From: Octopus bimaculoides
Lineage: Eukaryota
Length of the DNA: 45,702 nt
Direction of reading: 5' to 3'
NCBI RefSeq assembly: GCF_001194135.2
Contig: NC_068981.1
Coordinates: 21,431,902-21,477,603, forward strand
The notes under the pieces are model-generated. The model was given only the letters and a program-made list of their open reading frames with translations, was not told where the DNA came from and did not search any database. Position 1 is the first letter of the stretch. Each line of letters starts with the position of its first letter. The position numbers and the translations under genes were made by a program. Of the stretch, positions 16,286 through 43,412 are shown in pieces.

Positions 16286-16329
16286 CAAAACAACAGAACA
16301 ACCAATGAAATTTTACTTGCCATTTTATT
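16286..16329 (-). terminator. Probable DDX1 polyadenylation signal with downstream GU-rich element
   Basis: Minus-strand AATAAA at 16329-16324, about 300 nt after the stop codon. It is followed about 20-40 nt later by TTGGTTGTTCTGTTGTTTTG (16305-16286), the canonical PAS plus DSE layout. Confidence 0.55.
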
Positions 16330-16625
16330 TATAATTAAAAAAAGAAAGCAATTTCTTTTTTTTTTTTCTTTTCTTCAAGACAATTTCAAAAGACAAACAT
16401 TTTTTTCAGAGTTATTCCACCGGTCAAGGTGGAAATAAAAAGTCAAAAAAGAAAAAAATGTCAAATAAAGCTCACATCACTTATATGAAAACAAAATTGT
16501 GAGAAAACTAAAACATAAAAGTTTTTTTTGGAAATGCCTGTTTAGTTATTGGGTTATCAATTCAGTTTCTTTTCAGTAGTTGAACAAAATGCACGTTGCA
16601 ACTTCTTTCTCCAGAAATTCTTCAT

Positions 16626-18821
16626 TCATCGACTTGCAAATTTCCTGTTATATTTCAAGTCAATAAAAGAGGTTTGTGCTCGTTTCTCCAATATTGCCAA
16701 TTCAGAAACTGTTGGAGCCAACTGAGCAACATGACCTCTGTACATTGACCCTGTATTTTTGCGCTTCTGTCCATAAGTGACTTTACCATCAAATTCAAAG
16801 ATTGGAATTTTCATGTCAGGTTGCACTTTATCAATTGTGATGTCCAAATGTTCTTGAATATCATTCAACAGTTTAGGTTCATCATACCAAATACAACAGC
16901 CACCTCTGTCAGTCAAATTGGTGTTATAGCATCCTTTACCACGAGTTGAACAGTTGGAATGGTACCAGACTTTCTCCTTTTTCACTGCAACCAGTGAAAC
17001 GGCCAAACCCATCCTTTCAGCACGACCAACACGACCAATACGGTGAATGTAGTTCTGTTTTTCATCAGGTAGAGTAACATTGATGACAAAAGGTAGACCA
17101 GTTACATCAATACCTCGAGCAGCTACATCAGTACAAATGAGAAATCGAACCTTCCTGTCTTTAAATTTTTGTAGATTAGCCTTACGCTCAGGAGGTTTTC
17201 GATCACTGTGAAGACAAACACAGGAATATTTACCTCTTCCCCGTTCCATTAAGTATTTCTCCATGTTATCACAATCCAACTTTGTTCGGCAGAAAATCAG
17301 TCCATGATCTATATTATGCTCATCAATGGCATTTATAGTGTATTCTCCTTTGAGGATTTTCACAGCTTCAGACATCATCTCAGGAGAAAATAGATTGCTG
17401 TGATTATCTTTATAATGAACACCATCAGTTTGAACATGGTGTTTCAGAGTTTTCCACTGAGTATCAACAGTTGGATCAATCTCACACACAACATGGTGCA
17501 CAGTCTCAGGGACAGAATCTTGACCCTTTAAATCAATCCAGGTGGGGAAATACATGATTCTCTCGGCCATTTTCTTCACATCAAATGAATGCAAAGTAGC
17601 AGAACAGACGACCATTTGTAAACGATTTCCATCATTAGTTACTTTTGGAATCTGTTGATGCAGACGGTTGATTAAATCTCCATAGCCTTGAGAGAGCAGA
17701 CCATCAGCTTCATCAAGCACAAAGAAACGCACTTGATGTAAAGCTAGCTTCCCAGTTGAAATCAAGTCGTCCATACGACCTGGCGTTCCTACGACAATAT
17801 CAATTCCTTGCTCCAACTTATCACATTGTTCTTTTGAACTAACACCTCCAATAATTAAAAGTTCTCGGATGTTAGGCTCTGCTAAATGTTTTTTGAACTT
17901 ACAAATTTGGGAAAAAGTTTGTTCAGCTAATTCCCTTGAAGGCTCAATAATGATAGCTTGGGGTGCATTAGGTGCAGGTTTGTGGGTATTTCCACCAGAC
18001 TCTATCTTGGAAACAAAAATAGCATCTTTCGGTGCTTTAAACAAAGAGGTCCAACTTTTATCTGGTGGATATTTAAAAGCATTTTCACCAAAATTTATAT
18101 CCATTTCTGCATTTTTCAAAACAAGAGCTGCAAAGAATTTCTCATTTCTTATTTGACCTGGAATATCATAAGCTTTACCAAGATCAATCCCATTTTTCGA
18201 CCATTTAATCAGTCCTTTCTCCAGATCTAAGTAACACCCAATAACATCGTTAATACCAAAAGATTCCCCATATGAATCAAACTGTCTGTTATGAGATTTC
18301 TTGCCGGTGCCACCAAACCCAAATCCATTTTTATCAGTACCAAGATCAAGGGTAGCTTTGTTTGTCGACCAACCCACACGACAAAGGCCCTCGTCTGTTA
18401 CAGTGGCTTCATAAAAATAACGTCCACTCTTGCCCAAAACAGCTTTGTTGGAGCGAACCCCGTGCCAGCCAGAGGGGTCTCTAGCCTGACATAAATGACC
18501 CTCGGGGTCAATAGCCATGGCATCGCTCCGGTCGAAGACGTTCATTTTCCAATTTTTTGATACATCAGCACTTTTTACTATAGTTTTGCCTTTACCTTTA
18601 CCTTCAGCTTGATCTTTCAAAGACTCTTGGACAATCTGTATGATGGGTAAACAGAAGGCTCCAGTCTTGCCGCTTCCAGTCTCGGCCGCCATCAGCACAT
18701 CTCCTCCTCCAAGAATCATTGGGATGGCTTCGGCTTGCACGTCTGTCGGTAACATCCAGTCCATCTCTTCAACAGCCTTGCCTAGTTCAGGCATTACTCC
18801 CATCTCTTCGAAAGCAGTCAT
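16626..18821 (-). CDS. DDX1: ATP-dependent RNA helicase DDX1 (DEAD-box with SPRY insertion), complete and intronless, 731 aa
   Basis: One uninterrupted ORF with Q motif (FEEMG...[10 protein letters not shown]), motif I AETGSGKT, a SPRY insertion between motifs I and Ia (diagnostic of DDX1), Ia PSRELAEQ, Ib [34 protein letters not shown] and [12 protein letters not shown]. The N-terminus [13 protein letters not shown] and C-terminal AQTSF resemble metazoan DDX1. Confidence 0.97.
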
Positions 18822-19264
18822 GATGCAATAATATCAATGTATCAACTACAATGATAACGTTCACACGACTCAGACAAACCACAATGTCTGAACAGGAAGA
18901 CGATAAAAATTCGACGTGCACAATAGTCACGCACAGAATATATTTTCACATGCTTACCGAAATATTTTTCTGAACGAAACTATTGGAGTCTCTTCTCAAT
19001 ATAACACTTCCTTCTATTTTTATATAGTTTTATTTTAGAATATTTAACTTATTTTTTATTTAAAATCATACGAGAAATGACCTTTGACATTAATTCAGTG
19101 CCCTATTAATATCCCAATTACTAACGTTGTCCCAAACATGAAAGCGTTATGTTCTTCACAATGTATAATATGAAGGAATTGGCTTTACTGGAATGACACG
19201 TCGTGTAATAATCGGAGACTTAGTAATGTTAAATTGTTGTTGTTGATAAAGTTGGAGGGCAACT
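18822..19264. promoter_or_regulatory. Putative bidirectional promoter and 5' UTRs shared by DDX1 and WDR59
   Basis: 443 bp separate two divergent start codons (18821 on minus, 19265 on plus). CpG density is locally raised on the DDX1 side. TSS positions cannot be seen. Confidence 0.65.
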
Positions 19265-19318
19265 ATGTCTATTAGGTGGAGTATTGAACAAAATGTCAAA
19301 GATCTTAAAGATCTTCAG
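19265..19318 (+). CDS. WDR59: WDR59 coding exon 1 (54 nt, [18 protein letters not shown])
   Basis: ATG at 19265, 18 codons, donor CAG|gtttgt. Resembles human MAARWSSENVVVEFRDSQ. Confidence 0.85.
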
Positions 19319-20716
19319 GTTTGTTAAAAACATGAAATATTTCGTTTAATATTTTGTCTGCAGTATCATTTGTCTTCCATTCACATCATCTTTTAAATAT
19401 TTATACATCTTCATGTTTAGCTAGCACGTATTTATGTATGTTTACATCGATAGGATAATGTCTGTATACATCAAAATGTATGTTCAACTCAGAAGGTTTA
19501 TTTGAAGAACATTCATGTAAAATCAGTACAGTTGCAATATAACAAATGTTTTATCTTGTGTTTATTTGTTAATGAAATAGTTAACTCCATTTATGCTCTT
19601 ATTACTGCCCGCACTAATACGAATCTAAGAGGGAACATCTGTACGGTTGCTAGAAATAGCAGCCAAGGCTCTCTCAAATCACTCCCCCTTGACTTTCAAA
19701 ATAGAAAGAAGACAAGTTAGGTATAGTTCTGATACATTATACTTTTAAAATGACAGGATAATAAAGGCTCCATGGCTTTTCATCATAGGTCTGTTGCATC
19801 GTGACTGCCTTGAGGCTATGCAACACCAATTACTCACTAACATCTGGTATTTACATTTCACTGTTGTTATGTGAGGAGAAATATGTCAATAGTTCGGGTT
19901 ACCTGAAAGATACGACTCCCCAATCTATATCTGTTAGACATGTAACAACTAACTACAAGTGTAATTAATTATCATATTACATTGTTGTTAATATAATAAG
20001 CCAGTATGGCTAATGCCATGACCTTTGTTGCTTGTGTGGTGCCGAACTATGTCTGCTTCAGTGACCCCCATCAATTCACAGGGGGTACAATTGGCATAAC
20101 TTGGCAATTGTACGTAGTAATAATGTAGATGACAACTTTATTTAAGGTTTTGAATAAACTGTTAATGTTTGTTTCATACAATTTTCTTTTACTGAACTAA
20201 TGTTAAGATCCATTTGAAGTAAAAGCCTTCATCACTAATCTGATCCAAACCTTGATATTTTAAATGTGCGTATTATATATGTATACATGTATATATATNN
20301 NNNNNNNNNNNNNNNNNNNNNNNNNNNNNNNNNNNNNNNNNNNNNNNNNNNNNNNNNNNNNNNNNNNNNNNNNNNNNNNNNNNNNNNNNNNNNNNNNNNN
20401 NNNNNNNNNNNNNNNNNNNNNNNNNNNNNNNNNNNNNNNNNNNNNNNNNNNNNNNNNNNNNNNNNNNNNNNNNNNNNNNNNNNNNNNNNNNNNNNNNNNN
20501 NNNNNNNNNNNNNNNNNNNNNNNNNNNNNNNNNNNNNNNNNNNNNNNNNNNNNNNNNNNNNNNNNNNNNNNNNNNNNNNNNNNNNNNNNNNNNNNNNNNN
20601 NNNNNNNNNNNNNNNNNNNNNNNNNNNNNNNNNNNNNNNNNNNNNNNNNNNNNNNNNNNNNNNNNNNNNNNNNNNNNNNNNNNNNNNNNNNNNNNNNNNN
20701 NNNNNNNNNNNNNNNN

Positions 20717-20975: not shown

Positions 20976-23900
20976 CATTATCATCATCGTTTAATATCTC
21001 TATTTCCATACTTGCATGGCTCGGTCAGAATTTATTGAAGCAGATTTTGTACAGCCTGATGCCCTTCTTGTCACCAACCATCACCTATTTCCAAATAAGA
21101 CAATATTTCCCCATGCCCTGACACATTCTTCAGTAAAGACTGGAAACAAACAACATAGCTTGTATCACAATGATGCTCATTTACAATCATCACATGATGT
21201 CAAGACAAAGGTACACACACACACAGTCAGCTTCTCTCGATTTCCATCTACTGAATCTACTCACAAGGCTTTTGTTGACCCAGGGTTATAGTGAACGGTT
21301 CAGTGGTTAGGGCATTCAGCTAACTATCATAAGGTCATGAGTTCAATCCCCAGTGACGTGTTGTGTCCTTGAGAAGATACTTTATTTCATGTTGTTCCAG
21401 TCCTCTCAGCTAGCAAAAATGAGTAGTACCTGTAGTTCAAAGGGCAGCCATGTCATACTGAATCCCCTTAAAAACTACAGTAAGGGGATGCATGTCTGTG
21501 GAGTGCTCAGCCACTTGCCCAAAGTGTTGCCCAGTGGGACTAAGACTACATGATTGGGAAGCAAGTTTCTTACCCACATACGGGTATACTACTATAATCA
21601 TGATATATTCAGTTCGTAGTAAGTATAATAACAAATCCATTAAAATTGTTTGATGTTTTTTAAAACAGTTGTATGTTTATTTACAGGCCAGTACAATGGC
21701 TGTGGACTGTCTTGGTCAATGGGTTCTTCTTGGAGGGTAAGAATATTTTCGTCTTGGTTATCTCTGTTTCCTGTTCAAATTGTAGTTTTGTCTTTCTGAA
21801 TATCTTTCTTTTTTTTTTTCTTTTAAATTCAGGAAAAGAGCTTTAACGTTGATGAGTCTTGAAAACCATGATCATGTTCGAAAAATTGACCGGAACAGCA
21901 AATATGACATCAGCTGTGTCCAGTGGAATCCACATGCCGTTGCAGCTGAAAAGTTTGCTGTAGCTGTAAGTGAACTATAAAATAGAGTGCAAGCTAGCAT
22001 ATTTGATGTTGTAAACCAAGAAATTTTAACTGTTCTGAAAGTCTGTACTATATGTGTCTTGATTTTGTTGAAATCTAAATTGTTTTGCAAATACCATTTT
22101 TGGTATTGCACAACTGTTATATGAATACATAATCTATTATAACTCAATGTGTTAGTTTTTAATACTTCATTAAATATAAAACAAATATAATAAAAAGAAA
22201 AAAACTCATTGAACAATTAAGTCATATTACATTGTTGTGCTTTTTTTTCTTAATAAATGTGGGTAGGGAAAAATTTGCAGCTGGGTACAATATATTATGT
22301 GTACCTTTAATTTTAGTGTGGGTTGTGGGTGGAGAAACGGCCTATTCTACATTGAGTTTGTAAAGTTACACCTTAATGGTGAGCGCAAGTATCTTCATAG
22401 ACAAACTGCAGGGGAGACAACTCTGAATTTTTTTTTTTTATCAAAATGAAACGTGGGTTGTGAGTTTGATCTTCAGCAGTGCCATGACAACTCCAGACAT
22501 GTTTCATGCTTATTACATCTCATCAATGAAACTTTGTTTAATTGTTACTACTGGATTTTAGAACTACAGGTAAAATAAGACAAAATACTGAGTGGTGTTA
22601 AAGAATGGACATGGTTTGATGAAGAGCACAACTTGGGTAGATTTCAAAATATGACTATTTGTTATTGTATGTAAAATGCTCTGTGGTTTCAGTATTGAGA
22701 TAGTGATAAGCTGTTGGGCATGTAGTTGATGAGGTTGTGAGTTTAAAACGGACAACATGTATGAACAAAATCTCTTAAATTATCAAGTATTTAACCTTTG
22801 GGTGTTTTAGGTCTACTATTATCTGATGAAATTGTATGTCATCATCATTGTCTTAACTCTCTCAGACCTGAGCCCCTGTGTCTAACTTTACCCTCCATTT
22901 GGACTCCTGAGCAAAAAAATAAGCAGTTGCATATACGGCTCCAGAGTAATGATTGCAGGCAAACTAATAGGCAGAATCACAAAAAAATTTCAAGAGAATA
23001 ACAATAATAAGCCTTTCTCTCTACTGAACAAATCACAAAAATATTCATGAGAATAACAATAGGCTTATCCTCCAACTACCATATTTGTTCACTGGAATCA
23101 CTACTATCCTCATCACTTTCACCGGTGTGATTGTCCAAATTATTTTCTTTGCCAACATATGTGTAAACTCTTTGTCCAAAGAATAAATATAATAATTTCC
23201 TCAACTGCAAAGAGTCTAGGCCTTGCTCATTTACAAGACAAAGTATTGGATTCATCACAAAATCGTTTTTTTATTTGTTTTTTTTTGCCTTGAAGGTGAC
23301 TTGTAAAAAACACCACTTGAGCATGGCCATTGCCAGTGCCGCCTGACTGGCCCTCGTGCCGGTGGCACGTAAAAGCACCCACTACACTCTTGGAGTGATT
23401 GGCATTAGGAAGGGCATCCAGCTGTAGAAACACTGCCAGATCAGATTGGGGCCTGGTGCAGCCTCCTGGCTTCCCAGACCCCAGCCGAACCGTCCAACCC
23501 ATGCCAGCATGGAAAACGGACGTTAAACATTGATGATGATGAGTTGGTATAGAGGACATCATTAACCAAGACTCATAACAACACTTGACTACATAGCTGT
23601 AATGTGATCAGTTGTCTAAGTTTAGTATTTAATCTTTTTCTATGTGTGCTTTTCATTACTGTTTTAGCAAGAATCTGACAGAAAAGGCAACAATTAAAGT
23701 ATTCCTGCTGTAGTGGGAACATAGTGTGACAGGGTTAATGTCCACTTTTCCATGCTTGCTTGGATCAGACAGAATTCATTGAATCAGATTTTCTATGGTT
23801 GGTTGCCCTTCCTGTCACCCACCCTCACTTGCTTCCAAGCAAAGTAATATTTTCTCATGGCTGGACATATTTTTCATGGAAGATTAGAACCAAAAGACAT

Positions 23901-26900
23901 TGTTTGTATGACAATAACACCTATTTACAAATATTGTGTGATGGTAAGGCCACGAGACAAACACACATACACATACATATAGGGGCTTCTTTCAGTTTCT
24001 GTTTACCAAATTCACTCACAGCTTTGTTCAGTCTGGGGCTTAAGTAGAAGACACTGAGTGAAAGTGCCACACAGCAGGACTGAACCTGAAACCACATTGT
24101 TGGGAAGCAAACTTCTTAACCACACAGTTGTGCGTGTATAATTAAGTTAGTGTTAACATACTGAATGCAAGGAACATTATTATGATCTATAACTGCCAAA
24201 TCAGATAATTCTAATAATTGATTTTAGAGTCATGTAACAAACTGTTTTCTATCTTAATAGTGTGGTCAGAAACTGGATGTCTATCATTGGCAAGATGGGA
24301 GCAATAGCAGCAAACCAATATGTTCCATAAAAGCTCATTCCCGTGTTGTAAGGTGAGATTCATATATAATTTCTAAATCTTGTAAACATTCTCTCTTGTT
24401 TCTTTTACTCTTGTATCTTCATTTCTTTTTAAAGTATTACCATTGTGTTGAGTCAAAAGTTTTGCAGTATTTTGGTTACTTATTTACTTTATTCATCAAG
24501 TTATAACAAAATCAGAGGCCACCATGTTGCACCATCTGAAGTTACCTTTCTATCAGTTCTTTAATTCTATGTTCATACCAGTTCTTGTCCTTCCACCTCC
24601 TCTTGGTTGATGAAGCATTGTGAGTGCAGAAAGTGAGCCATAGATGAGAACAAGTAATAATTTGAGGAAGATATTTTTCCACAATATTAACATCCATAAG
24701 TAGTGGTTACCAAGCATGGGAATCTGTTACCAAGCATGGGCATTTCAAACAGATGTTCTGCGTCTGGTGGAATTATGAGGGGATAATTCACTGTGAGTTT
24801 GTTCTGGATGGTTGAACCATCAATACCAACCAGCACTCCAAACAGCTGGAATAGATGTATGTCATTGTGTGGCAAAAATACCCAGCATTGGTTAACAGAA
24901 ACCAAGCTCTTCTACAGCAAGAGAATGCAAGACCTCATAATGCTCAAACTCCAAAAACTTGAGGGAATCGAACTGATGGCACACCCAGCATATAGTCCAA
25001 ACCTAATTCCCTTGGATTATTACTTGTTCCAATCTATGGCTCAAATCCTGTGCTCACAACACTTCATCAACCAAGAGGAGCTGAAAGCTTCAGTGAAGGA
25101 ACTCTTCGCCTTGAAAGACAAGAACTGATGTCAGCTTGGGATCAAAGAACTGGTAGAAAGGTAGCTTTAGACAGTGCAACATGATGGCCTCTACTTTGAA
25201 TGCTAGGCTGTTTTTGTTATAACTTGTCAAATAAAGCTAATAAGTTAACAAAATATTGCAAAACTTTTGAGCACAATAAATCATTCTTTAACTATCAACA
25301 TTTGAAAGTGAGCTATTGCTCTAATCAGTCTCCAATCAGTGAAGTATTTATTAGGTGATATGAATAATCATCATCTTTATTTTCATGTCTGTTTTTCCAT
25401 ACTGGCTTAAGTTGAATAGGGTTTTTTGAGGTAGCTGGATCCCTTTTCTGATAGAAGCCATTTTAATTGCCTCATAATATGCAGGAATACAGTGTACCTA
25501 TTCTAAAAATGGAGGTACACACATTTTTTTTTCTCTTCAGTATTTGGATCAAAGACAGGATATATTTCAAGCTGCTTCTGTTGTTATCACCACTGGACAT
25601 CATTGATCCAGGTGTGACCAAGAACATTGTTTGAATGAAAAGGTCAATGTTTTGAGCAATAGTCACTTTATCTTTATTGTGGGGTACGCTATTCAAAAAT
25701 ATATGATCATTTCAATAATTCTTCATTATCATCATCATGAAAAATGGACATTAAATGATGATGATGAGGAGGATTAACTTCCTGTATGACAAGGTACTGC
25801 ACTGGACTGATGGTCTTGAAATGCATGATATCACAAGAATTGTACTAACCTTGTTTACATTCATTTTAAAGGAAGTGAGGAACCCTCTAATGTAAGGGAA
25901 AAAGTCTTCTATCATTCATTTCTGTTTTGTAACATCCCTTGTACTTTTGTTGTTTTTTGTTATTTGTATTTGCTTTTTGTTTTATATATATATATAGAAT
26001 ATTTATTTTGTGTGTATTTCTTTAGTGATTTAGATTGGTCACCATTTGATGTCAACATCCTGGCTTCTTGCTCTGTTGATTCCTACACTTTTCTCTGGGA
26101 TATCAGGTCAGTCCTTGTATTTTGTTGAATAAAACAATATTTAGTGATATTTTCATGATATCAGTAATATTGTATCATCATCACCATCATCATCATTGTA
26201 ATCAGCTGCATTATTTTCAGTGCACTTATGTGCAATATTGATAATTCAATCAAGGAATATAATTAATGCTGTGAAATATCTAGAGAGAATCTTCAATTCA
26301 AGCTGTTCTGCTTTTATTGTAAGCAAATTTTGTAAAAAGACAGTTTTGACTCAACCAGGGAATCAAAAGCTGTTTTATGATTTTCATTATCAGCTACATT
26401 ATCCTTTGATTGAAACCAATTAATTTTTACTTAATCTGCATGGTCTTATTTGTTATCATTAAGATATTCAAAATGCATGAAAATCATTGTTAAGATGTAC
26501 AACTCTGACTTAAGCTCAGGTACTTGAAGGATACCAAATGGAACTGTAAAACCTTAGAAAGGATAAGTCAATTAATTGTCACATTGATGCATACCAATAA
26601 AAAGAATATCTTAGACTAGGAGGAACAGAAGTAAATAATGAATACACAAAATATTCTGTAATTAAGATAAAAACATTTTATTCTTGTTCTGTTATGTAAT
26701 TCATATATGTGTAAGAGTCATAAAAGCTTACTAATAACTATATTGAAATGTAGAATCTGTCTCCTACTTTGTGAATTCAGTTATTTGCATAAGAAACTAT
26801 GTAATTAAGTGGAATTGACCATATTATGTATTCTTGTTGTTGCAAGTTTGTTGCCACTGGTATTAATATAACAAATACACTCACAAGATTGCTCTATATA

Positions 26901-28313
26901 CTCAAAGCTGGCCTTGTTATTTTTCAGAGAACCAAAGAAACCTACTGGATCATTTCAGACAGTTGGTGAGTATATACTGTACTTGACAACAGCAGTGTCA
27001 TGTGAACCACTAGTTTACAAATATTTCCTTATGTTCTGCTATGTTTAGACAACCCATGCAAACATATAAAAACTGATATAAAAATGATAAAGACTCATTC
27101 ATTCATTGTTGGCACTCTGTCGCTTACGTCGTCGAGGGTTCCAGTTGATCCGATCAATGGAACAGCCTGCTTGTGAAATTAACGTGCAAGTGGCTGAGCA
27201 CTCCACAGACACGTGTACCCTTAACGTAGTTCTCGGAAATATTCAACGTAACACAGAGTGACAAGGCTAACCCTTTGAATTACAGGCACAACAGAAACAG
27301 GAAGTAAGAGTGAGAGAAAGTTGTGGTGAAAGAGTACAGCAGGGTTCGCCACTATCCCCTGCCGAAGCCTCGTGAAGCTTTAGGTGTTTTCGCTCAATAA
27401 ACACTCACAACGCCTGATCTAGGAATCGAAACTGCAAGTCCGCTACCCTAACCATTGGGCCATTGCGCCTCCACAATAAAGACTATATATATATATATAT
27501 ATATATAAACAAACTTGAAGTCAATTCAAATATTTTCGCTGCAGTTTGCCATGGAGAAATGTTCTCGCTTTAAGCAAAAGGTATTGAAAACAACTGAGTC
27601 AGTTCAAAGCAGCGATTATGCTAAAAATACACTTACAAGTCCATAGAGGATGCTTTGAACTGACTTTTCACTTTCAGCAAGGGTTTTTCCCTCATACTAA
27701 ACCTCAGTGAAAATGCCTCTTTGGAGATATACTGTGCATGAGAAGACCTGGCAAGCCAAGTGAGAGCATAACTGTGGCCTATGCCAGTGCAGCATAACTG
27801 GTCCATATCAGAGTACCCTTCAATCATTGGGCAATAAACTGCGCTTGCGAAGACCTGTTGAGTCAAGTGAAGTCATTGTTGTAGCTGATGACAGTACTGC
27901 CTGATTGACACCCATGAAAACCACCATTCAAATGATTGGCACATGAAAACCACCAATCAAATGTAGTCCATGCCAGTGCCATCTGACTGGCTCCCATGTC
28001 GGTGGCATGTAAAAAACACCATTTGAATGTGGCTGGTGCCAGTGCCGGCTGACTGTTTCCGTGCTGGTGGCACGTAAAAAGCACCCACTACACTCTTGGA
28101 GTGGTTGGCATTAGGAAGCACATCCAGCTGTAGAAACCTTGCCAGATCAGATTGGAGCCTGGTGCAGCCTTCTGGCTTGCCAACCCTCAGTCAAACTGTC
28201 GAACTCATCCCAGCATGGAAAGCAGATGTTAAACGACGACGATGATGATGATGATATATACATGGGTGATATATTACTACACTCGTATATATCTATCTAT
28301 ATATTTATGTATA

Positions 28314-28368
<55 letters not shown>

Positions 28369-31300
28369 CACTTTGAATTATATGTTAGACCAGGCTCACC
28401 TGTGTGTTGTGATGACTGTTGTGTTACTATATCTTCTAATGTCTGTTGTGTTGTAATTTGTAACATCTTTTCTGTTGCAATGCATATTGTGTTGTAGTGT
28501 CTGCTGTGTTGCAGTGTTTTCTATATAATGTCTGCTCTGTTGTTATGTCTACTTTTGTCATTATGTCAATTGTATTACATCTATTGTGTTATATCTTCTG
28601 TGCTGCTATGAAATATAGGTTGTCTTGTCTGTATGTTACGTGTAATTGATTATACATAAGATTATTGTGCCATTTCTCACAAGATGTTTTATCATTTGAT
28701 GACCAAATCACATGAGAAAGGAGGATGTTTTTACAAATGCTGCCTTTTCTTTTGTCTTTTCCTTAAGCTGGTGCCTCTCAGGTTCAATGGAACAAAGTTA
28801 CCAACAACACATTTGCTACAACACATGAAGGTGATGTCAGAATTTGGGATCCAAGGGTAGGTTTTATAAAATCTTTTCCATTAGATCTTGACATTCTCTT
28901 GTACCAATTTCCACACCTAACTGTAAAATTGTAACTTAATATCAAATCCTTAACAACTTCATCCTGAACTGGAAAGTTCGACTATAATATTTATTTATAA
29001 TGTCTATTGGTTAAAAAATACAATTAGATAGAACAGTGCTTCTCAAACTATCTGATGTGGCGTACTGGCAGTTTGTTTTTCCAATGTGCCAGGGACTGGT
29101 AATATTTCTTAGTAATATTAATTTATACCGGAAACAATATATATAATGAATATAATAAAAGTTGACAATTTTCTTATCTTGTATTTATTTTGTAACCAAA
29201 TAATACAATATTACGTAAGCATTTTATAATGTTTCTTTCTTTTCTGGAAACTTGCCGTGTACCAGCAGCTGATGGCTTGCAGACTGGCACCAGTCCGCAG
29301 ACCACCACTTTGAGTAGCACTGAGATAGAAGATAAAATAGTATTGTAAATTTTATTTGCAAAACCAGATACATCTAGATACAAGTGACTGAGTAGTCTTT
29401 GGAATACTAATCAGAGGATTCAGTTCCACTTGGAATCACCATTCATGTTATAATCTTTACTGTGCTTCATATTCTTACTTTTCTCTTTTTTCCCTTTCCA
29501 AGATAAGTTTTTATTTATTTGGATATGTTCACATTGTTCAACTTTTTTCCACTAAGATTTCTTTCCTACTAACTATGAAGTAGAAATAGAGCAATAGAAT
29601 CTATGTCAGTAATGCAAACCTAATGAATACACACCATGTGGCTCTTTACAACAGTTGGTGTTTGGTGTGAACTTATGATAATGCTACTTACACACCAGGC
29701 TATCTTTTCCACTTCTTTCCAGTTGGATCCCTGCTTTTTCAGCTCTGCTTCAGTATTTCAACCTCTAGCTATTTTTAGGCCACCATCTCTTCCACCACTC
29801 TTGTGGTTGTATGTTTCCCTGACAGAAGGCTTTTCTCTCTCCTAGATCTTGTTGGTTTTGTCATCCATGCATCTGTAACTTTGCTTTTTTCTAGGTAGGA
29901 GTCTTGGTCCTACACAAACCTATTTCTCTCTCTGGAAAGTGGTGGTCCATATTATTCTGGCCTGTGTCCTTTGACTTGTCTCGCATGTGAGGCCCTACCA
30001 AGTACTTGAACTCCATTGGTATTGCTTTCTCAGGGTCATCGAGGCACACAAGCTACCACACTACAACAGGGACTGGATCTTGTGGTCATGAATGCAGTCA
30101 GCCAGTAATCTAACATATTAAGCTTACAACCATAGTGCCTGTCTTGAGAATCTACTCTATAACAAAAATTGTAAAGCCTAGAAGTATTTAGATAGCACGA
30201 AACTATTCACAATATAGAAAACTTTGCATAGAGATTTAGTTTTGTGAAACCCAACCTTTGATATTATATCACTTATGTCTTTATATTATCCTGACAGAAA
30301 GGAAATACTGCTGTGCAGTATATTGCAGCCCACCCGTCCAAGATTTATGGTTTAGACTGGAGTCCGTTTTCAGAGTACAATTTAGCTACTTGTAGTCAGG
30401 ACTGTACAGTGAAGGTAAGTTTTTACTTCCACATTTTGATATACTAGTTGGTACTAATTCTGAATGAGAATTTTGTCATTGAACAAAGTGTCCCCCCACC
30501 CCTCACCCTCTTCTCTGTTTCTCTCTTTCCATTGAAAATCTTTAAGATGTCCCAAACATTTGCTGATAATTTCAAATCTCTGCTATAAAGTTGATACCCA
30601 AGCAATAGTCTGATGACAGTAATGTCAACTTCAGCTGTAACTCTGATAATGTGCCTAAAAATTACAATGATTCAGTTCCTGACCATTAATAGTTTTCAAG
30701 TCCATTTCTCCTGCTCCTAATATTACTATATGGAATATCTTGTCTTCATTAAAAAAAAAAAGACTGTATACCTCAAGTTCAAGATTTTATTGCTGAAACT
30801 TCATTTTACAATAATTCTTTGAGAAGCAAAAGGGTCCGTGCAGAGCCATGTAAAAGTGCCCAGCACACCCTGTGAAGTAGTTGGCATTAGGAAGGGCATT
30901 CAGCTATAGAGACCATGCTAAATCAGACTGGAGTCTGATGCAACTCACCTACTTGCAAGATTTGATCAAACCATCCAACCCATGCTAGTATGGACAACGG
31001 ATGTTAAATGATGGGGCTAATGATGCATTAATTTCACTGTAATATTTTCATTAACACAGAGAAAATGTACAATTTAGACGCAATTATCTTAATATTGCTT
31101 CTAACTTAGAAGAAAGAGATAATCTGCATACTTGAATTCTTTACTCTAGTTCTTTCCTATCTTACTTTGTAAAAGAGCTACTCTTGGGTCCCAGATAATA
31201 GTGGGGTTGAAATAAGCAGGTGGGTTGGATATTTGCTTAAAAAGTGGGTGGGTTGGAAAATCGGTAATTGTATAGTGGTAACTATAAAATTTAAATATTT

Positions 31301-34300
31301 TCTAGGTTGTCTCCCTTGATTTTCTTTTTTTTTTTTAAATCATTTATTTACTCTCGAGTCCCAAATAATAGGTGGGGTGTTGAAATAAGCGGGTGGGTTG
31401 GACATTTGCTTAAATTCATATAAGCGGGTAGATTGGAATAAACGGAGGTGGGTGGGAATCAGTAACAGCATAGTGTATGTACGAAAATTAGGAAAAAAGC
31501 ATCTTAAAGCACATATAACAACACAACGAAGCAAAAGAAATTAACAAAAGGCAAATGAAATTAGCACATACGTGTACTTCAAACGTTCACTTTAGTTAAG
31601 ATATACATTTGGATGATAAAAACAAGACATTTGTTAATTATGGTAATTTGGGTTTTTTTTTTTAAATGCAATGGACTAAACAGATATTGATACAAGCAAC
31701 ACGTCTTAAAAAGAAAGAAAAGTAAAACACAATGAAAAGAGTATATAATTACAGTTTCGTGAACTTGCAGTATTTTCACATTATACATAATAAAACATAA
31801 ATAGGTATAAATGATAGACTCATGATTTTTCATTACTGTCCTTCTGCAGGTTTCTCGGTTTCGATATTCGCTTCTTTACATATTGCTGAGCTTCACTGAC
31901 AGTTGACATGAGTTTGTTTTGATATGGCAAGAAAAGTGTAGAGGTCTCGTTTTCATACAACACCTTCTGTATTTTATCAAGGAACAGGGCATCTATATTA
32001 ACCTGATCATCACTGCTGATTCCTACTAGAGAGATAGAGCTTCCTATCATCATGTTTGGCCAACCATGCTTTGGCTCCTGTGAAACCTCCATGGGGGTTT
32101 TTCCAGATGGGTCAATTACCTCCAGAAGATTCCCAGATGGTTCGCTTTCATCTTCCGACTCACTTTTCTTTGGTGCCATCACCATCAAATAGTTCTGAGC
32201 CTTCAATATTATTTGCATGCTTGACTCCCTGAATAGTATTTGGGCAGGGTTTTGACGTAATCTCTAGACGAAACTCTCACAGCAACAGACCGATGAGGTG
32301 CATGATTCAGTCTGACCCCTTATAATTTTCAGAGCCATCGAAAGTGTTTGTGGCCCATGTCAACTTGAAAGCAGCTTCAACATCAATCTGCATGTGCTTG
32401 TTGTAGCATCTGCATCATCTCAGATCGATTGGGTATGATGGATTATCCTTCTGCAACGTGTATTTTTCTGAGATACTGGAGTGTCTTTCAAATATTGTAA
32501 TAAAATTTTTTTTATATATTAGTATTAGATAGAGTTGTATAAAAAAAATATTTTTGGTAATAAATCAAATAAAAAAGTTTGGGCACTAATGGATTAAAGT
32601 AGAAAACAGGTCCTTAGTGACTGAATGAATAACTGCTGTTCAATAAGTGTTGTTTTCTGGAATCATTCTTAGGATAATTGTATGAAATTAGCTATATGTA
32701 TGGCATCCCTTGGAAATATTGTGAATCAGAACCTAACAATTTTTACTGTAGGCATGTGCCCTGCACTCAGTTTTACTGGTCCATGTAGAACTTTCCTTAT
32801 AGGAAGCCCTATCTGAGCAACTGAAACTGTGTTTAGGCACTCATAGAGCCTCTGAAATTTGCTATGATATATTCAACGTGCCCATAGTCAGTACATCATC
32901 ATCATCATCATCATCATCGTTTAACGTCCGCTTTCCATGCTAGCATGGGTTGGACGATTTGACTGAGGACTGGTGAAACCGGATGGCAACACCAGGCTCC
33001 AGTCTGATTTGGCAGAGTTTCTACAGCTGGATGCCCTTCCTAACGCCAACCACTCAGAGAGTGTAGTGGGTGCTTTTACGTGTCACCCGCACGAAAACGG
33101 CCACGCTCGAAATGGTGTCTTTTATGTGCCNNNNNNNNNNNNNNNNNNNNNNNNNNNNNNNNNNNNNNNNNNNNNNNNNNNNNNNNNNNNNNNNNNNNNN
33201 NNNNNNNNNNNNNNNNNNNNNNNNNNNNNNNNNNNNNNNNNNNNNNNNNNNNNNNNNNNNNNNNNNNNNNNNNNNNNNNNNNNNNNNNNNNNNNNNNNNN
33301 NNNNNNNNNNNNNNNNNNNNNNNNNNNNNNNNNNNNNNNNNNNNNNNNNNNNNNNNNNNNNNNNNNNNNNNNNNNNNNNNNNNNNNNNNNNNNNNNNNNN
33401 NNNNNNNNNNNNNNNNNNNNNNNNNNNNNNNNNNNNNNNNNNNNNNNNNNNNNNNNNNNNNNNNNNNNNNNNNNNNNNNNNNNNNNNNNNNNNNNNNNNN
33501 NNNNNNNNNNNATACTGTAAGTATACATTTATAATTTAATGTCCTGAAATTCAGTTTTAATTTTCATCCCCATTTTCAAAGAACTCTGTAAAAACATACA
33601 TTTCATTAGAAATAATCTGTGTTCTTAGACCTAAACTGAACTACCATCAAAAACATGCAATTGTGTGTTAGATCTTTCATATATGGTCATTATATGTTAA
33701 ATATAATGTATGAAATGTAGATGAAAATATCTCTACTGAAAAAACAACTTGGCAAAAGATGAGGCATTTTTATACTGCATTGCTCAGTGGATAGAGCATC
33801 AGGCTTGCAATCATGAAGTAGTGAGTTCGATTCCCAGATCAGGCTGTGTGTTGTGTTCTTGAGCAAGACACTTTATTTCATTTATTTAGTTCACTCATCT
33901 TTAGAAATGAGTTGCAACATCACTGGTGCCAAGCTGTATCGGTCTTTGCCTTTCCCTTGGATAAAATCGATGACATGGAGAGGGGTGGCTAGTATGCATG
34001 GGCGACTGCTAGCCTTCCACAAAAAACAGCCATTCCTGGACTTGTGTCTCAGAGGGAAACTTTCTGGGTGCAATCCTGTGGTTGTTCATGACTGAACAGG
34101 GTCTTTACCTCTATGTACTAACTACATAAAAAATTACATATTTTGCACCACTATATACTTGTTATATAACTGTTGATGAAGTTTTACACCATTCGGCATT
34201 AAGAAGGGTATCCAACCATAAAAACCATGCCAAAGCAGACATTGGAGCTCAACGCAGTCCTTAGACATCAGTTCCTGTTAAACCATCCAACCTATACCAG

Positions 34301-37300
34301 CATAGCACATGGAGGTCAACCCTTTAGCTTTTAAACTGGCCATATCCAGCCCTAATAGTCTACCTGTTTTATGTTCAAACCAGCCAGATTTGGCCTCTCA
34401 CACCAGTCCAACAATGCCATTCTAAAAATTAACAGTCACATCATCAAATTCTCAAAGCTAAGAGGTAATGTGTTATTAATTTGAAACACTATGAAGGCGG
34501 TGAGCTGGCAGAATCGTTAGCACACTGGATGGAATGCTTAGCGGTATATTGCTTCTCGCTACATTCTGAGTTCAAATTCCGCCATGGTTGACTTTGCCTT
34601 TCATACTCTTGGGGTCAATAAATTAAGTACCAGTGGAACACTGGGGTCACTGTAATTGACTTAGTCTCTTCCCCCAAGCTGCACTTGTGGCAAAAATTTG
34701 AAATCGTTAATTTGAAACAGTGTGAATAAGCATTAGATTTGGCAGAGTAATCTGAATGCTAGAGGATTAAATGACGATGATGATGATAAATTTGATATAT
34801 ATTGGTGCACCAACCATTTTATAACCATTCAGCATTTGTTTGGTGGAGCTTGTTGAATGTTTAACAAATTCTACCAAATAGAGTGTTTGACAGTTTGTTA
34901 TGAACCAGTTTAATAAATAATATTTATTGGTAACATCTGTTGATGTCTTGAGTTCTTCATATAATAGTGGCTACTGTTTGCATTCATCATCATCATCATC
35001 ATTATTATCTAATGTCCGCTTTCCATGCTGGCATGGGTTAGATGGTTTGACTGGAACTGCTAAGGGCTGCACCAGGTTTCTATGACTGGATGCCCTTCCT
35101 AACACCAACCACTCCATGAGTGTAATGGGTGCTTTTTACATGCCACTGGCATGGGTCCATTTACATGACACTGGCAATGGCCACGACTACGATTTCACTT
35201 GGCTTGACAAATCCTAATACTTCCATATTTATGTAACCAATCAAACTAACTATATTTTCAAATGACATTGCAACAAAATATGAGTAAAGGTCATCATCAT
35301 CATCGTTTAACGTCCGCTTTCCATGCTAGCCTGGGTTGGACGATTTGACTGAGGACTAGTGAACCAGATGGCTACACCAGGCTCCAATCTGATTTGGCAG
35401 AGTTTCTACAGCTGGTTGCCCTTCCTAACGCCAACCACTCTGAGAGTGTAGTGGGTGCTTTTACGTGCCACCGGCATGAAGGCCAGTCACACGGTACTGG
35501 CAATGACCACGCTCAAAATGGTGCATTTTACGTGCCATCTGCACATGAGCCAGTCCAGCGGCACTGATCACGCTCGAACGGTGCTCTTAGTGCTCCACTG
35601 GTACATGTGCCATCACGATTTTGCTTGCCCCAACAGGTCTTCGCAAGCCGAGTTTAGTGTCCAATGAAGGAGACGTTGGCATGGGGGCCAGTCATTGAAT
35701 TTAGTTTGATTTCGATTTGTTATGAGAAGCAAAAGAATCTAATGTGGTCCAATGACTGAAACAAGTAAAAGATAGAAACTAATGTTCTCTGAAATAAGTG
35801 ACCCTCCTAACAGATCTTTCTTTCTCGTTTCCTTTCTTTCACAGCCTTTCCAAATTGGATTAGTCACACTTGTTCTACCTCAATTAACCAGGGAGCCATA
35901 TCTGTATTTATGGAATATTTCTAACCTCAAGCAACCTGTGCACACTTTTGTAGGACATGCTGATGTTGTTTTAGACTTTCACTGGAGAAATAAAGCAAAA
36001 GGTAATCTGTTGATTTATCTGTGTGATTTGTGTGTGAAAGTGAGTGCATGTTTTGAATGTTCCCTTTTTATCAGAGAAGCGATAAGAGATTTGTGGAATG
36101 TTGTATATATGGTATGTGTGGAAGGTCCAGAGGGAAAAGTAGTAAGAAGGCAGAGAGGAAGAAGAGGGTGGAGGTGGAGTTGATGGACAATATAAAGAAG
36201 AGAAAATAAGAAGGGTAGGAATCATCATAGGAATCATCATTGGTGAGAAATGATCAAATGTTGAGCCTTACAGAGATGACAAAGAACCAAAGTATTTGGC
36301 AATTTGTTGTACTTGAGAAGACCTGCCCAGGTAAGTTAAATCCTGAACATAAAGATGGGTCCTTTATGTCCATTCTCCCCATTCACTCCACAACCCATGT
36401 CCACTACCACTGTATTCCTTCTCCTCCCTTAGATTCTCTCCCATGTACCAACTGGCATACAATATGTTCCCATTGAATCCCTTCCTCACAACATATTCTC
36501 CTAATACCCCCTCATTCTACCTGTGTCCACTTATTACATTTTTCCCCCATCCCAGGTCCAGCTTTCCTTTCGCAATCTTGGAAACTCACTCTCTCCAATC
36601 CTTGCTCCACCTCACTACATACACCTCCCTGTAATTTGGGTGTTTGGTCCATCTTCCCTTTCCGTCACATCTTCACCGTTTTTCCTCTTTTTCTCTCCAC
36701 CTAATGTAGCTGTTTCTCTTCTGATGCAAGACACCTTTTTCTGTCTTTCAATAATACTCCCCCACCCCAGCTGAGAAGTATTGCCTCGAAAGTTATTCAG
36801 TGAAAGGAAGTTGTTGATGGCTATATTCCACCATAAACTGAATGTTTATGTCAAGTCCATTTAGAAGTGCTTGCCAAAGAACAAAGCAGTCATCTAGATA
36901 TCTCTTCCAGTTATTTTCAAGGGAGAATAGGTTTCCGTATTTTTGTAGTACCTTACAATAAAGAGTGATTTCTAAGTACCCCATGACTAGGTTAGCAAAG
37001 GAGGGGGCAATTCTCATACCCATCGCAGTCCCTGAATTCTGTTGATAGAAGTTGTCATTGAATATGAAGTTATTCTTCAAGATGAATTTTAGCCCTTCTA
37101 TTACGAATTCTTTTTTGATGCGGTGTGGGAGTTCATTGGAATAATTCTCTAGCGAGAATTGGATTGCCTCTATTCCTAGGTTATGGGGGATATTAGAGTA
37201 CAGGTTGACTACATCGAAGGATACGAGTAAGGTTTTTTTACTAATTGCTTAAGGGAGGGGATTGAGTATATCTAGGTCATCCCTTATGTAGCTTTTGACA

Positions 37301-41995: not shown

Positions 41996-42141
41996 TCTCC
42001 CTCTCTCTCTCTCTCTCCACCCNNNNNNNNNNNNNNNNNNNNNNNNNNNNNNNNNNNNNNNNNNNNNNNNNNNNNNNNNNNNNNNNNNNNNNNNNNNNNN
42101 NNNNNNNNNNNNNNNNNNNNNNNNNNNNNNNNNCTCTCTCT
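41963..42141. repeat. (CT)n microsatellite spanning the N gap 42023-42133
   Basis: Directly visible. Confidence 0.9.
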
Positions 42142-42765: not shown

Positions 42766-43083
42766 TTTATATATGTTCATCCAGTCATATTTGTTTGTAT
42801 GTGTGATGGCTCACTCTCTCCCTCTCTCATTCTTTCTATCTATATTTCTCTGTGTGTGTGTGTGTATTTATCTCCAGTACCAAAACGTATTTTCACCCAA
42901 ACAGGTTGAATGTCCAGTCAGCCATGCCAGATCATCAGCATGCCGACAGCCATGTCCAATCATTTCATTATTCTGACTTACTGATTGTTTCCTATTTCAT
43001 ATACATGTGAGAGATGTAACCCTTTGAATGCAAGAAATCTCAGTAAGATTTGTACCATATGAAGTGGAGAATATCTTTGCATA

Positions 43084-43412
43084 TCGTTGCCAGTACCGCC
43101 TGACTGGCCTTCATAGGGTTTTCGAGCGAGATCGTTGCCAGTGCCCCTGGACTGGCTCTTGTGTGGGTAGCACATAAAAGACACCATTTCGAGTGTGGCC
43201 GTTGCCAGTACCGCCTGACTGTTTCCGTGCTGGTGACACGTAAAAGCACCCACTACACTCTCTGAGTGGTTGGCGTTAGGAAGGGCATCCAGCTGTAGAA
43301 ACTCTGCCAAATTAGATTGGAGCCTGGTGTTGCCATCCGGTTTCACCAGTCCTCAGTCAAATCGTCCAACCCATGCTAGCATGGGAAGCGGACGTTAAAC
43401 GATGATGATGAT
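43084..43412 (+). mobile_element. Young RTE LINE 3' end
   Basis: Nearly identical to 37860-38095 across the tail. Confidence 0.9.

What the first reader, a model, noticed from the sequence alone, without database searches (positions are those of the whole stretch)
16626..18821. Full-length intronless DDX1 beside an intron-rich neighbour: probable functional retrogene
Seen: 2.2 kb of uninterrupted ORF with every helicase motif intact and a canonical PAS. The adjacent WDR59 keeps at least 10 introns in its first roughly 320 codons. Its exon sizes (54, 50, 81, 38, 89, 117, 157, 80) match what I recall for human WDR59. Established: vertebrate DDX1 has many exons (26 in human), and DDX1 belongs to the RTCB tRNA-ligase complex. 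Inference: this is gene-specific, all-at-once intron loss by retroposition or cDNA recombination, not general genome compaction, and it may have replaced the parental copy. No poly(A) scar or TSD is visible, which suggests an old event.
Basis: partly seen in the sequence, partly recalled or inferred. Interest (0 to 1): 0.7.

Follow-up and report, generated by a model that had tools for sequence, protein, structure and literature searches.

The report
Intronless DDX1 shared by coleoid cephalopods
Octopus, argonaut and cuttlefish all carry their only detectable copy of the housekeeping RNA helicase gene DDX1 as one uninterrupted exon, 443 bp head-to-head from the intron-rich WDR59 gene; this is a real, ancient (before ~275 Mya) RNA-mediated loss of every ancestral intron, most likely a retrocopy that replaced its parent, and it is a tidy new example of a known process rather than a new kind of thing.

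Summary
Window 16626-18821 (-) is an intact 731-aa DDX1 (DEAD + inserted SPRY + Helicase_C, all helicase motifs present) with no intron. It lies 443 bp head-to-head from WDR59, which has at least 8 GT-AG introns in its first ~300 codons. The window is Octopus bimaculoides chromosome CM046601.1.

The same single-exon DDX1 beside WDR59 exon 1 occurs in Argonauta hians and Sepia pharaonis, so the state predates the octopod/decapodiform split. It is derived. Capitella DDX1 has 24 coding exons and Aplysia has 14. Eight intron positions and phases are shared between them, and all are absent in octopus.

The gene is under strong purifying selection (dN/dS 0.035-0.06), is transcribed in decapodiforms, and no second cephalopod copy appeared.

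What remains open is retroposition plus parental loss (favoured, ~0.55) versus in-situ cDNA conversion plus coleoid-stem rearrangement (~0.33). No poly(A) scar or target-site duplication survives. Neighbours differ in every class sampled (DHODH in Aplysia and Mytilus, ARMC6 in a chiton). Coleoid genomes are known to be heavily rearranged.

The chiton DDX1 has independently lost all ancestral introns, and Aplysia has lost its 3' half introns.

Verdict: new member of a known kind, of moderate interest.

The parts
16626..18821 (-). DDX1 coding sequence. It is a single exon of 731 codons plus the stop. The SPRY domain (residues 134-246) is inserted in RecA domain 1.
   Evidence: It is collinear with the Argonauta and Sepia genes. 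It is the called gene in GCA_001194135.2.
16300..16625 (-). DDX1 3'UTR (~300 nt) with the poly(A) signal AATAAA at 16329-16324. The end of the UTR is approximate. An A12 run at about 16367-16356 lies inside the UTR and is not conserved.
   Evidence: the PAS block is conserved between Octopus and Argonauta; the A-run is absent from Argonauta, so it is not a retroposition scar.
18822..19264 (.). 443-nt interval between the divergent DDX1 and WDR59 start codons. It is the putative shared bidirectional promoter plus both 5'UTRs. It is a CpG-undepleted island in a CpG-depleted genome.
   Evidence: CpG o/e is 1.24 here (Argonauta 1.48, Sepia 1.20) against 0.29 for the window. There is a continuous Octopus-Argonauta alignment with conserved blocks. 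The decapodiform transcript 5'UTR is collinear with the Sepia genome, so there is no UTR intron. Promoter function is inferred, not shown.
19265..19318 (+). WDR59 exon 1 (54 nt, [18 protein letters not shown]), followed by a GT donor.
   Evidence: It is conserved in Argonauta and Sepia at the same position relative to DDX1.
21687..36001 (+). Further WDR59 exons: 21687-21736, 21833-21965, 24261-24352, 26026-26106, 26928-26965, 28768-28856, 30298-30414 and 35845-36001. All have AG/GT borders. The gene runs on beyond the window.
   Evidence: Exons 1-8 join into an open 218-aa frame. The called gene product is 976 aa.

Best explanation
This is the single, functional DDX1 orthologue of coleoid cephalopods. 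It owes its intronless state to one RNA-mediated event in the cephalopod lineage, before octopods and decapodiforms split.

The most likely sequence of events is as follows. A fully spliced DDX1 mRNA was reverse-transcribed in the germ line. The copy inserted a few hundred bases upstream of WDR59, in the opposite orientation. There it was transcribed from WDR59's CpG-rich, constitutively open promoter acting bidirectionally, took over the housekeeping role, and the multi-exon parental gene was then lost (retrogene replacement).

Shown:
- the gene has no intron;
- the missing introns are ancestral;
- the arrangement is shared by three coleoid genomes;
- the gene is under strong constraint and is transcribed;
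- no second copy is detected.

Inferred:
- reverse transcription as the cause;
- insertion at this site rather than a later rearrangement;
- promoter sharing;
- loss of the parent.
For: **Intron content**
- Zero introns over 731 codons in Octopus, Argonauta and Sepia. There is no 5'UTR intron in decapodiforms.
- Capitella has 24 coding exons and Aplysia has 14. Eight intron positions with identical phases are shared between them (Octopus residues 23, 54, 86, 103, 132/133, 186, 211, 236). The mollusc ancestor therefore had them, and the octopus lacks all of them, including the 5'-most.

**Location**
- DDX1 sits head-to-head with DHODH in both Aplysia and Mytilus but with WDR59 in all three coleoids.
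- No DHODH is found within the window or within 10 kb of DDX1 in Argonauta or Sepia.

**Promoter region**
- The 443-nt divergent interval has CpG o/e of 1.2-1.5 against 0.29 for the window, and is conserved between Octopus and Argonauta.

**Function and copy number**
- dN/dS is 0.06 (Octopus-Argonauta) and 0.035 (within decapodiforms).
- Transcript-like contigs from six sequencing runs have shared ends.
- Only one DDX1 cluster per cephalopod lineage appears among the best 120 relatives. The cephalopod clade is monophyletic with an ordinary branch length.

**Precedent**
- Amphioxus SYCP1 shows the same combination of retrogene replacement and a co-opted bidirectional promoter (PMC5803294).
Against: - No poly(A) remnant is conserved. 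The A12 run is inside the UTR and absent in Argonauta.
- There is no target-site duplication beyond chance: 210 of 500 shuffles do as well.
- The ancestral locus is not securely known. The chiton DDX1 lies beside ARMC6, and Capitella and Owenia show no DHODH neighbour. The DHODH pairing may therefore be specific to gastropods plus bivalves.
- The coleoid stem underwent intense rearrangement that created hundreds of new microsyntenies (PMC9068888 and PMC9023564). A new neighbour can arise without retroposition.
- Aplysia shows that in-situ, 3'-biased cDNA-mediated intron loss does act on this gene in molluscs.
- The octopus DHODH locus, a Nautilus DDX1 and a whole-genome search for DDX1 relics could not be obtained with the tools.
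Confidence: 0.55

Rival explanations
1. In-situ cDNA conversion followed by rearrangement. A full-length DDX1 cDNA recombined with the resident gene and erased all introns at the original locus, keeping the original promoter. The large-scale genome scrambling of the coleoid stem lineage then brought the gene next to WDR59.
For: - Aplysia DDX1 has lost every intron in codons 363-732, where Capitella has 10, while keeping 13 in the 5' half. This is the classic 3'-biased signature of recombination with cDNA at the resident locus.
- The microsynteny of DDX1 differs in every class sampled.
- Published work shows intense interchromosomal rearrangement and hundreds of novel microsyntenies in the coleoid stem.
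- No retroposition scars are present.
Against: - Removing the 5'-most introns by recombination needs homology within a very short first exon. In Aplysia the first coding exon has only 16 nt of CDS.
- It needs a breakpoint inside the short divergent promoter interval and a rejoining within ~440 bp of another gene's start codon without disabling either gene.
- The CpG-rich interval looks like a single shared promoter.
Confidence: 0.33
2. An old retrocopy born in the stem of Mollusca coexisted with its parent. Lineages then sorted the two copies differently: coleoids and chitons kept the processed copy, while gastropods and bivalves kept the parent.
For: Both coleoids and the chiton Liolophura lack every ancestral intron.
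Against: - In the NJ tree the chiton groups with gastropods and bivalves, not with cephalopods.
- The neighbours differ: ARMC6 and an F-box/WD40 gene in the chiton, WDR59 in coleoids.
- The idea requires two copies of a housekeeping gene to coexist for a very long time.
Confidence: 0.05
3. Stepwise loss. Each intron was removed separately by genomic deletions or short cDNA patches over a long time, with no single all-at-once event.
For: Intermediate states exist in molluscs, for example Aplysia with 13 of about 23 introns.
Against: - No intermediate is seen within coleoids. All three lineages have exactly zero introns and perfectly collinear coding sequence.
- At least 13 independent exact deletions in one gene are required, while the neighbour WDR59 keeps its introns.
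Confidence: 0.05
4. Artefact: cDNA contamination or mis-assembly placed a processed DDX1 sequence in the assembly.
For: None beyond the general possibility. There is an assembly gap 1.5 kb away at 20299-20716.
Against: - The same gene has the same flanks, with WDR59 exon 1 at the same distance, in three independent assemblies of three genera.
- Non-coding flanks are alignable between Octopus and Argonauta across the whole interval 19342-16615.
Confidence: 0.01

Closest known systems
Amphioxus SYCP1 retrogene replacement (Garstang & Ferrier 2018, PMC5803294)
   Same: - A conserved, normally multi-exon single-copy gene exists as one coding exon at a new locus.
- The parent is absent.
- The gene lies divergently next to a housekeeping gene (CHIC there, WDR59 here), whose promoter is proposed to act bidirectionally.
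- The state is shared by the species of the clade.
   Different: - AmphiSYCP1 evolved a new multi-exon 5'UTR and no CpG island was found. Here the 5'UTR is unspliced and the interval is CpG-rich.
- The coleoid event is older, and the parental locus is not identified.
'Orphan' retrogenes of the human genome (Ciomborowska et al. 2013, PMC3548309)
   Same: Intronless functional genes whose intron-containing parents have been lost, recognised by comparison with intron-rich orthologues in outgroups.
   Different: That was a genome-wide vertebrate survey. DDX1 in vertebrates is multi-exon (26 exons in human, from my own knowledge). This case is in cephalopods and concerns a core RNA-processing helicase.
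Reverse-transcriptase (mRNA-mediated) model of intron loss at the resident locus (e.g. PMC3652778)
   Same: Exact removal of introns with the coding frame untouched. The gene is expected to be germ-line expressed. Aplysia DDX1 shows the typical 3'-biased pattern.
   Different: In coleoids no intron at all is left, including the 5'-most, and the neighbourhood differs from that of gastropods and bivalves.
Canonical metazoan DDX1 (human DDX1; PDB 8tbx, 4xw3)
   Same: Same domain architecture and motifs. It is 64-66% identical to vertebrate DDX1 over the full length.
   Different: Only the gene structure and genomic context differ. Nothing suggests a changed protein function.

Membership tests
DDX1 (DEAD-box helicase with inserted SPRY domain) | DEAD-box core motifs Q, I, Ia, Ib, II, III, V and VI are intact | tested here: met
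   all motifs found; DEAD 1.7e-37, Helicase_C 2.2e-27
DDX1 (DEAD-box helicase with inserted SPRY domain) | SPRY domain inserted inside RecA domain 1, between motif I and motif Ia | tested here: met
   SPRY at residues 134-246; motif I at 46 and Ia at 294. 4xw3 human DDX1 SPRY, E=6e-71.
DDX1 (DEAD-box helicase with inserted SPRY domain) | Orthology: closest to named DDX1 proteins and nested within mollusc DDX1 | tested here: met
   all best hits are DDX1; 91% to Argonauta, ~75% to bivalves and gastropods; NJ tree
DDX1 (DEAD-box helicase with inserted SPRY domain) | Subunit of the RTCB tRNA-ligase complex; ATPase and helicase activity | not testable with these tools
   Needs biochemistry.
Retrogene / retrogene replacement | Lacks all introns present in the parental or ancestral gene | tested here: met
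   0 introns against 13 (Aplysia) and 23 (Capitella); 8 shared ancestral positions are absent
Retrogene / retrogene replacement | Lies at a locus unrelated to the parental locus | tested here: inconclusive
   The neighbour is WDR59 in coleoids and DHODH in Aplysia and Mytilus. But the chiton, Capitella and Owenia have yet other neighbours, and the coleoid stem was heavily rearranged.
Retrogene / retrogene replacement | Poly(A) tract remnant directly after the 3'UTR | tested here: not met
   no A-run after the PAS; the A12 run upstream of the PAS is not conserved in Argonauta. This is expected to be erased after more than 275 My, so it is uninformative rather than contrary.
Retrogene / retrogene replacement | Target-site duplications flanking the insert | tested here: not met
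   the longest shared direct word is 9 nt, and 210 of 500 shuffles reach it.
Retrogene / retrogene replacement | Parental multi-exon copy absent from the genome | tested here: inconclusive
   One DDX1 cluster per cephalopod lineage among the best 120 protein hits. There is no other DDX1 fragment in the window. A whole-genome search was not possible.
Retrogene / retrogene replacement | Functional: open frame, purifying selection, transcription | tested here: met
   dN/dS 0.035-0.06; RNA-like contigs with common ends and an adapter remnant, in decapodiforms. Octopus transcripts were not examined.
In-situ cDNA-mediated intron loss | Gene stays at the ancestral locus with ancestral flanks | tested here: inconclusive
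   Same data as for the locus test above. The ancestral cephalopod locus is unknown.
In-situ cDNA-mediated intron loss | 3'-biased loss with 5' introns tending to persist | tested here: not met
   No intron remains in coleoids. The pattern is met in Aplysia.

The most novel reading that the evidence does not exclude
DDX1 has been replaced by a processed copy at least twice independently within Mollusca, once in the coleoid stem and once in chitons. Each time the copy ended up divergently paired with a different housekeeping gene's promoter (WDR59 and ARMC6). DDX1 would then be a recurrent 'retrogene replacement' hotspot, and the divergent CpG promoter would be the landing pad that makes replacement of an essential gene possible.
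Probability: 0.3. Interest if true: 0.5.

Novelty: new member of a known kind. Interest (0 to 1): 0.35.

Why it matters
If the retroposition reading holds, this is a clean, datable example (between the cephalopod origin and ~275 Mya) of an essential single-copy RNA-processing gene being swapped for its own processed copy and surviving by sharing a neighbour's promoter. Such examples are few outside vertebrates and amphioxus.

It also gives cephalopod genomics three things:
- a discrete rare-genomic-change character for coleoids, which can be tested in Nautilus;
- a natural case for asking how an intronless housekeeping mRNA is expressed and exported efficiently;
- evidence, together with chiton and Aplysia, that DDX1 is unusually prone to RNA-mediated intron loss in molluscs.

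It does not imply any change in what the protein does.

Tried and rejected
**Searches and look-ups that did not deliver**
1. I tried to find the octopus DHODH locus so I could look for DDX1 relics and test whether DDX1 left its ancestral chromosome. I rebuilt 185 aa of Aplysia DHODH from L010 and searched with it. The listed hits were all under 325 aa, with no mollusc among the named ones. That used the last protein search, so the test could not be done.
2. The WDR59 N-terminal query confirmed identity but returned only 2 proteins. WDR59 loci in non-cephalopod molluscs could therefore not be fetched.
3. Look-ups of Haliotis, Mizuhopecten and Mya DDX1 found no record. Mytilus and Owenia genes were too long for DNA to be returned, so only their neighbours and gene spans are known.
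4. No Nautilus sequence was available. None of the unnamed ~76% relatives falls with cephalopods.
5. Four literature searches found no description of cephalopod DDX1 gene structure.

**Ideas tested and rejected**
6. Poly(A) scar: the A12 run at ~16367 is inside the 3'UTR and not conserved. Rejected.
7. Target-site duplication: nothing above chance.
8. cDNA contamination or assembly artefact: rejected because three independent assemblies share the gene and its flanks.
9. Horizontal or viral origin: rejected because the protein nests within mollusc DDX1.

Full report
**What is there**

The window is Octopus bimaculoides chromosome CM046601.1, about 21.44 Mb in GCA_001194135.2. On the minus strand, 16626-18821 is one ATG-to-stop frame of 731 codons. 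Given the local stop-triplet frequency, an open frame of that length has a chance probability of about 1e-19.

Pfam finds DEAD (split), SPRY (134-246) and Helicase_C. The best solved structures are human DDX1: 8tbx at E=1e-215 and the SPRY domain 4xw3 at E=6e-71. All core motifs are intact.

A canonical AATAAA lies at 16329-16324, in a block conserved with Argonauta.

On the plus strand WDR59 starts at 19265. Its identity is confirmed by fish GATOR-complex WDR59 at E=1e-46. Exons of 54, 50, 133, 92, 81, 38, 89 and 117 nt, all with AG/GT borders, join into an open 218-aa frame. A 157-nt exon follows at 35845-36001. An intronless 2.2-kb gene lies 443 bp, head-to-head, from a gene that spreads its first ~300 codons over 17 kb.

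**How old and how widespread**

The DDX1 genes of Argonauta hians (L002) and Sepia/Acanthosepion pharaonis (L009) are also single uninterrupted blocks, collinear with the octopus protein from residue 1 to 731. Each has WDR59 exon 1 at the same short distance on the opposite strand. The Sepia gene call starts 57 nt too late; the open frame gives 732 aa.

The arrangement therefore predates the octopod/decapodiform split. Albertin et al. estimate that split at ~275 Mya (PMC9068888).

**Is it derived?**

Yes. Exact spliced mapping gives the following coding structures:

| Taxon | Coding exons | Notes |
|---|---|---|
| Capitella teleta (annelid) | 24 | introns throughout the gene |
| Aplysia californica (gastropod) | 14 | all 13 introns within codons 1-362; a single 1110-nt exon covers codons 363-732 |
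| Liolophura sinensis (chiton) | 2 | one intron, in codon 14 |
| Coleoids | 1 | no intron |

I projected these positions onto the octopus protein. Eight intron positions with identical phase are shared by Aplysia and Capitella: residues 23, 54, 86, 103, 132/133, 186, 211 and 236. These introns were therefore present in the mollusc ancestor and were removed in the cephalopod lineage.

The DDX1 genes of Mytilus and Owenia span 231 and 141 kb and are clearly interrupted, although no DNA was returned for them.

**Is it functional and alone?**

- dN/dS is 0.06 between Octopus and Argonauta and 0.035 between two decapodiforms. dS is saturated between the two superorders.
- Six contigs from different sequencing runs of a decapodiform encode the protein. 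Five of them (L004-L008) start within about 25 nt of each other and end at the same base, and one carries an adapter remnant. These are transcripts.
- Their 5'UTR is collinear with the Sepia genome, so there is no UTR intron either.
- Among the best 120 relatives there is one DDX1 cluster for Octopus spp., one for Argonauta and one for decapodiforms.
- In an NJ tree these form one clade inside Mollusca with an ordinary branch length.
- No other DDX1 fragment is in the window.
- A whole-genome search for a second copy was not possible.

**Mechanism**

Exact, complete removal of at least 13 introns from one gene, while the neighbour keeps its introns, points to a spliced-RNA intermediate. I hold this with high confidence (about 0.9).

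Two versions compete.

*(A) Retroposition next to WDR59, use of its promoter in the divergent direction, then loss of the parent.* Evidence for:
- Not even the 5'-most introns remain.
- In Aplysia and Mytilus, DDX1 is head-to-head with DHODH. In coleoids it is head-to-head with WDR59, and no DHODH is nearby.
- The 443-nt interval is a small CpG island, with o/e of 1.2-1.5 in three species against 0.29 for the window. It has blocks conserved between Octopus and Argonauta. This is what a shared housekeeping promoter would look like.
- Amphioxus SYCP1 is a documented precedent for this exact scenario (PMC5803294).

*(B) Conversion of the resident gene by a full-length cDNA, followed by rearrangement.* Evidence for:
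- Aplysia's intron-free 3' half shows that in-situ, 3'-biased cDNA-mediated loss acts on this gene.
- DDX1's neighbours differ in every class sampled: ARMC6 and an F-box/WD40 gene in the chiton, and other genes in Capitella and Owenia. The DHODH pairing may therefore not be ancestral for cephalopods.
- The coleoid stem lineage is known for intense rearrangement and hundreds of novel microsyntenies (PMC9068888 and PMC9023564).

The classical scars are absent. There is no conserved poly(A) tract and no target-site duplication above chance. After more than 275 My this says nothing either way.

I put (A) at about 0.55 and (B) at about 0.33. Ancient paralogy with differential sorting and stepwise loss get about 0.05 each. 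An artefact is about 0.01, because three independent assemblies agree.

**Comparison with the known, and novelty**

The protein is an ordinary DDX1. The gene is a new example of retrogene replacement (an 'orphan' retrogene; PMC5803294, PMC3548309) or, less likely, of complete mRNA-mediated intron loss in place.

Four literature searches found no description of it. The library is limited to open-access papers and preprints, so absence there is not proof.

It is a new member of a known kind. It is useful as a rare-genomic-change marker for coleoids and as a case of promoter sharing, but it is not surprising in principle.

**Unexpected by-product**

The chiton DDX1 has also lost every ancestral intron. 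Its one intron is at a position not seen in Aplysia or Capitella (codon 14, phase 1), and the gene sits head-to-head with yet another housekeeping gene. Together with the Aplysia pattern, this suggests DDX1 is repeatedly subject to RNA-mediated restructuring in molluscs. Whether the chiton case is a second retrogene replacement is the most novel reading left open.

**What could not be done**

I could not examine the octopus DHODH locus, WDR59 loci outside cephalopods, Nautilus, or whole-genome copy counts. These are the decisive next steps.

Noticed in passing
L011:10001-14677 (Liolophura sinensis, chiton): The chiton DDX1 has only two coding exons: 40 nt and 2156 nt. Its single 2.48-kb GT-AG intron sits in codon 14 (phase 1), a position not shared with Aplysia or Capitella, and contains (CA)n/(TA)n microsatellites. 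All eight demonstrably ancestral introns are gone. This is an independent near-total intron loss, possibly a second retrogene with a later-gained intron.
   Followed up: partly
L010:26935-28044 (Aplysia californica): Aplysia DDX1 keeps 13 introns in codons 1-362 but encodes codons 363-732 in one 1110-nt exon, where Capitella has 10 introns. This is a textbook 3'-biased pattern of cDNA-mediated intron loss at the resident locus.
   Followed up: partly
L001, L002, L009, L010, L011 and the Mytilus place: In every mollusc examined, DDX1 is divergently paired at short range with a different housekeeping gene. The partner is DHODH in Aplysia (852 nt between CDS starts) and Mytilus (293 nt), ARMC6 in the chiton (1772 nt), and WDR59 in coleoids (419-522 nt). 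The partner changes but the head-to-head layout recurs.
   Followed up: partly
window 18822-19264: CpG observed/expected is 1.24 in the DDX1-WDR59 interval against 0.29 for the whole window and 0.52 for the DDX1 CDS. This suggests a small unmethylated island in an otherwise CpG-depleted (methylated) region. The same holds in Argonauta (1.48) and Sepia (1.20).
   Followed up: partly
L009:9944-10000 (Sepia pharaonis): The deposited Sepia gene model (713 aa) starts at an internal Met. The open frame begins 57 nt upstream and gives a 732-aa protein with the conserved [16 protein letters not shown]-terminus.
   Followed up: yes
window 36793-37080 (-), inside a WDR59 intron: A 95-aa ORF has a weak reverse-transcriptase match (RVT_1, E=9e-4, below Pfam's cut-off). 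It contains a YLDD motif and is probably a decayed retroelement. Neighbouring ORFs at 37446-37934 and 38042-38395 (-) have no Pfam match.
   Followed up: partly
window 23227-23562 (-), 32973-33130 (+), 37446-37934 (-), 42978-43346 (-): Several ORFs share near-identical peptide strings (e.g. ...[30 protein letters not shown]... and [30 protein letters not shown]...). This indicates a dispersed repeat family scattered through the WDR59 introns in both orientations. The one copy scanned (42978-43346) had no Pfam match.
   Followed up: no
window 20299-20716, 33131-33511, 42023-42133: Three assembly gaps (runs of N). The first is flanked by long TA/TATG-type microsatellites. The first two lie in WDR59 introns, and the one at 33131-33511 may hide a WDR59 exon between the 117-nt and 157-nt exons.
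   Followed up: no
window 31820-32218 (-): A 132-aa ATG-initiated ORF, acidic and Ser-rich at its N-terminus, lies antisense inside a WDR59 intron. It has no Pfam match and its status is unknown.
   Followed up: no
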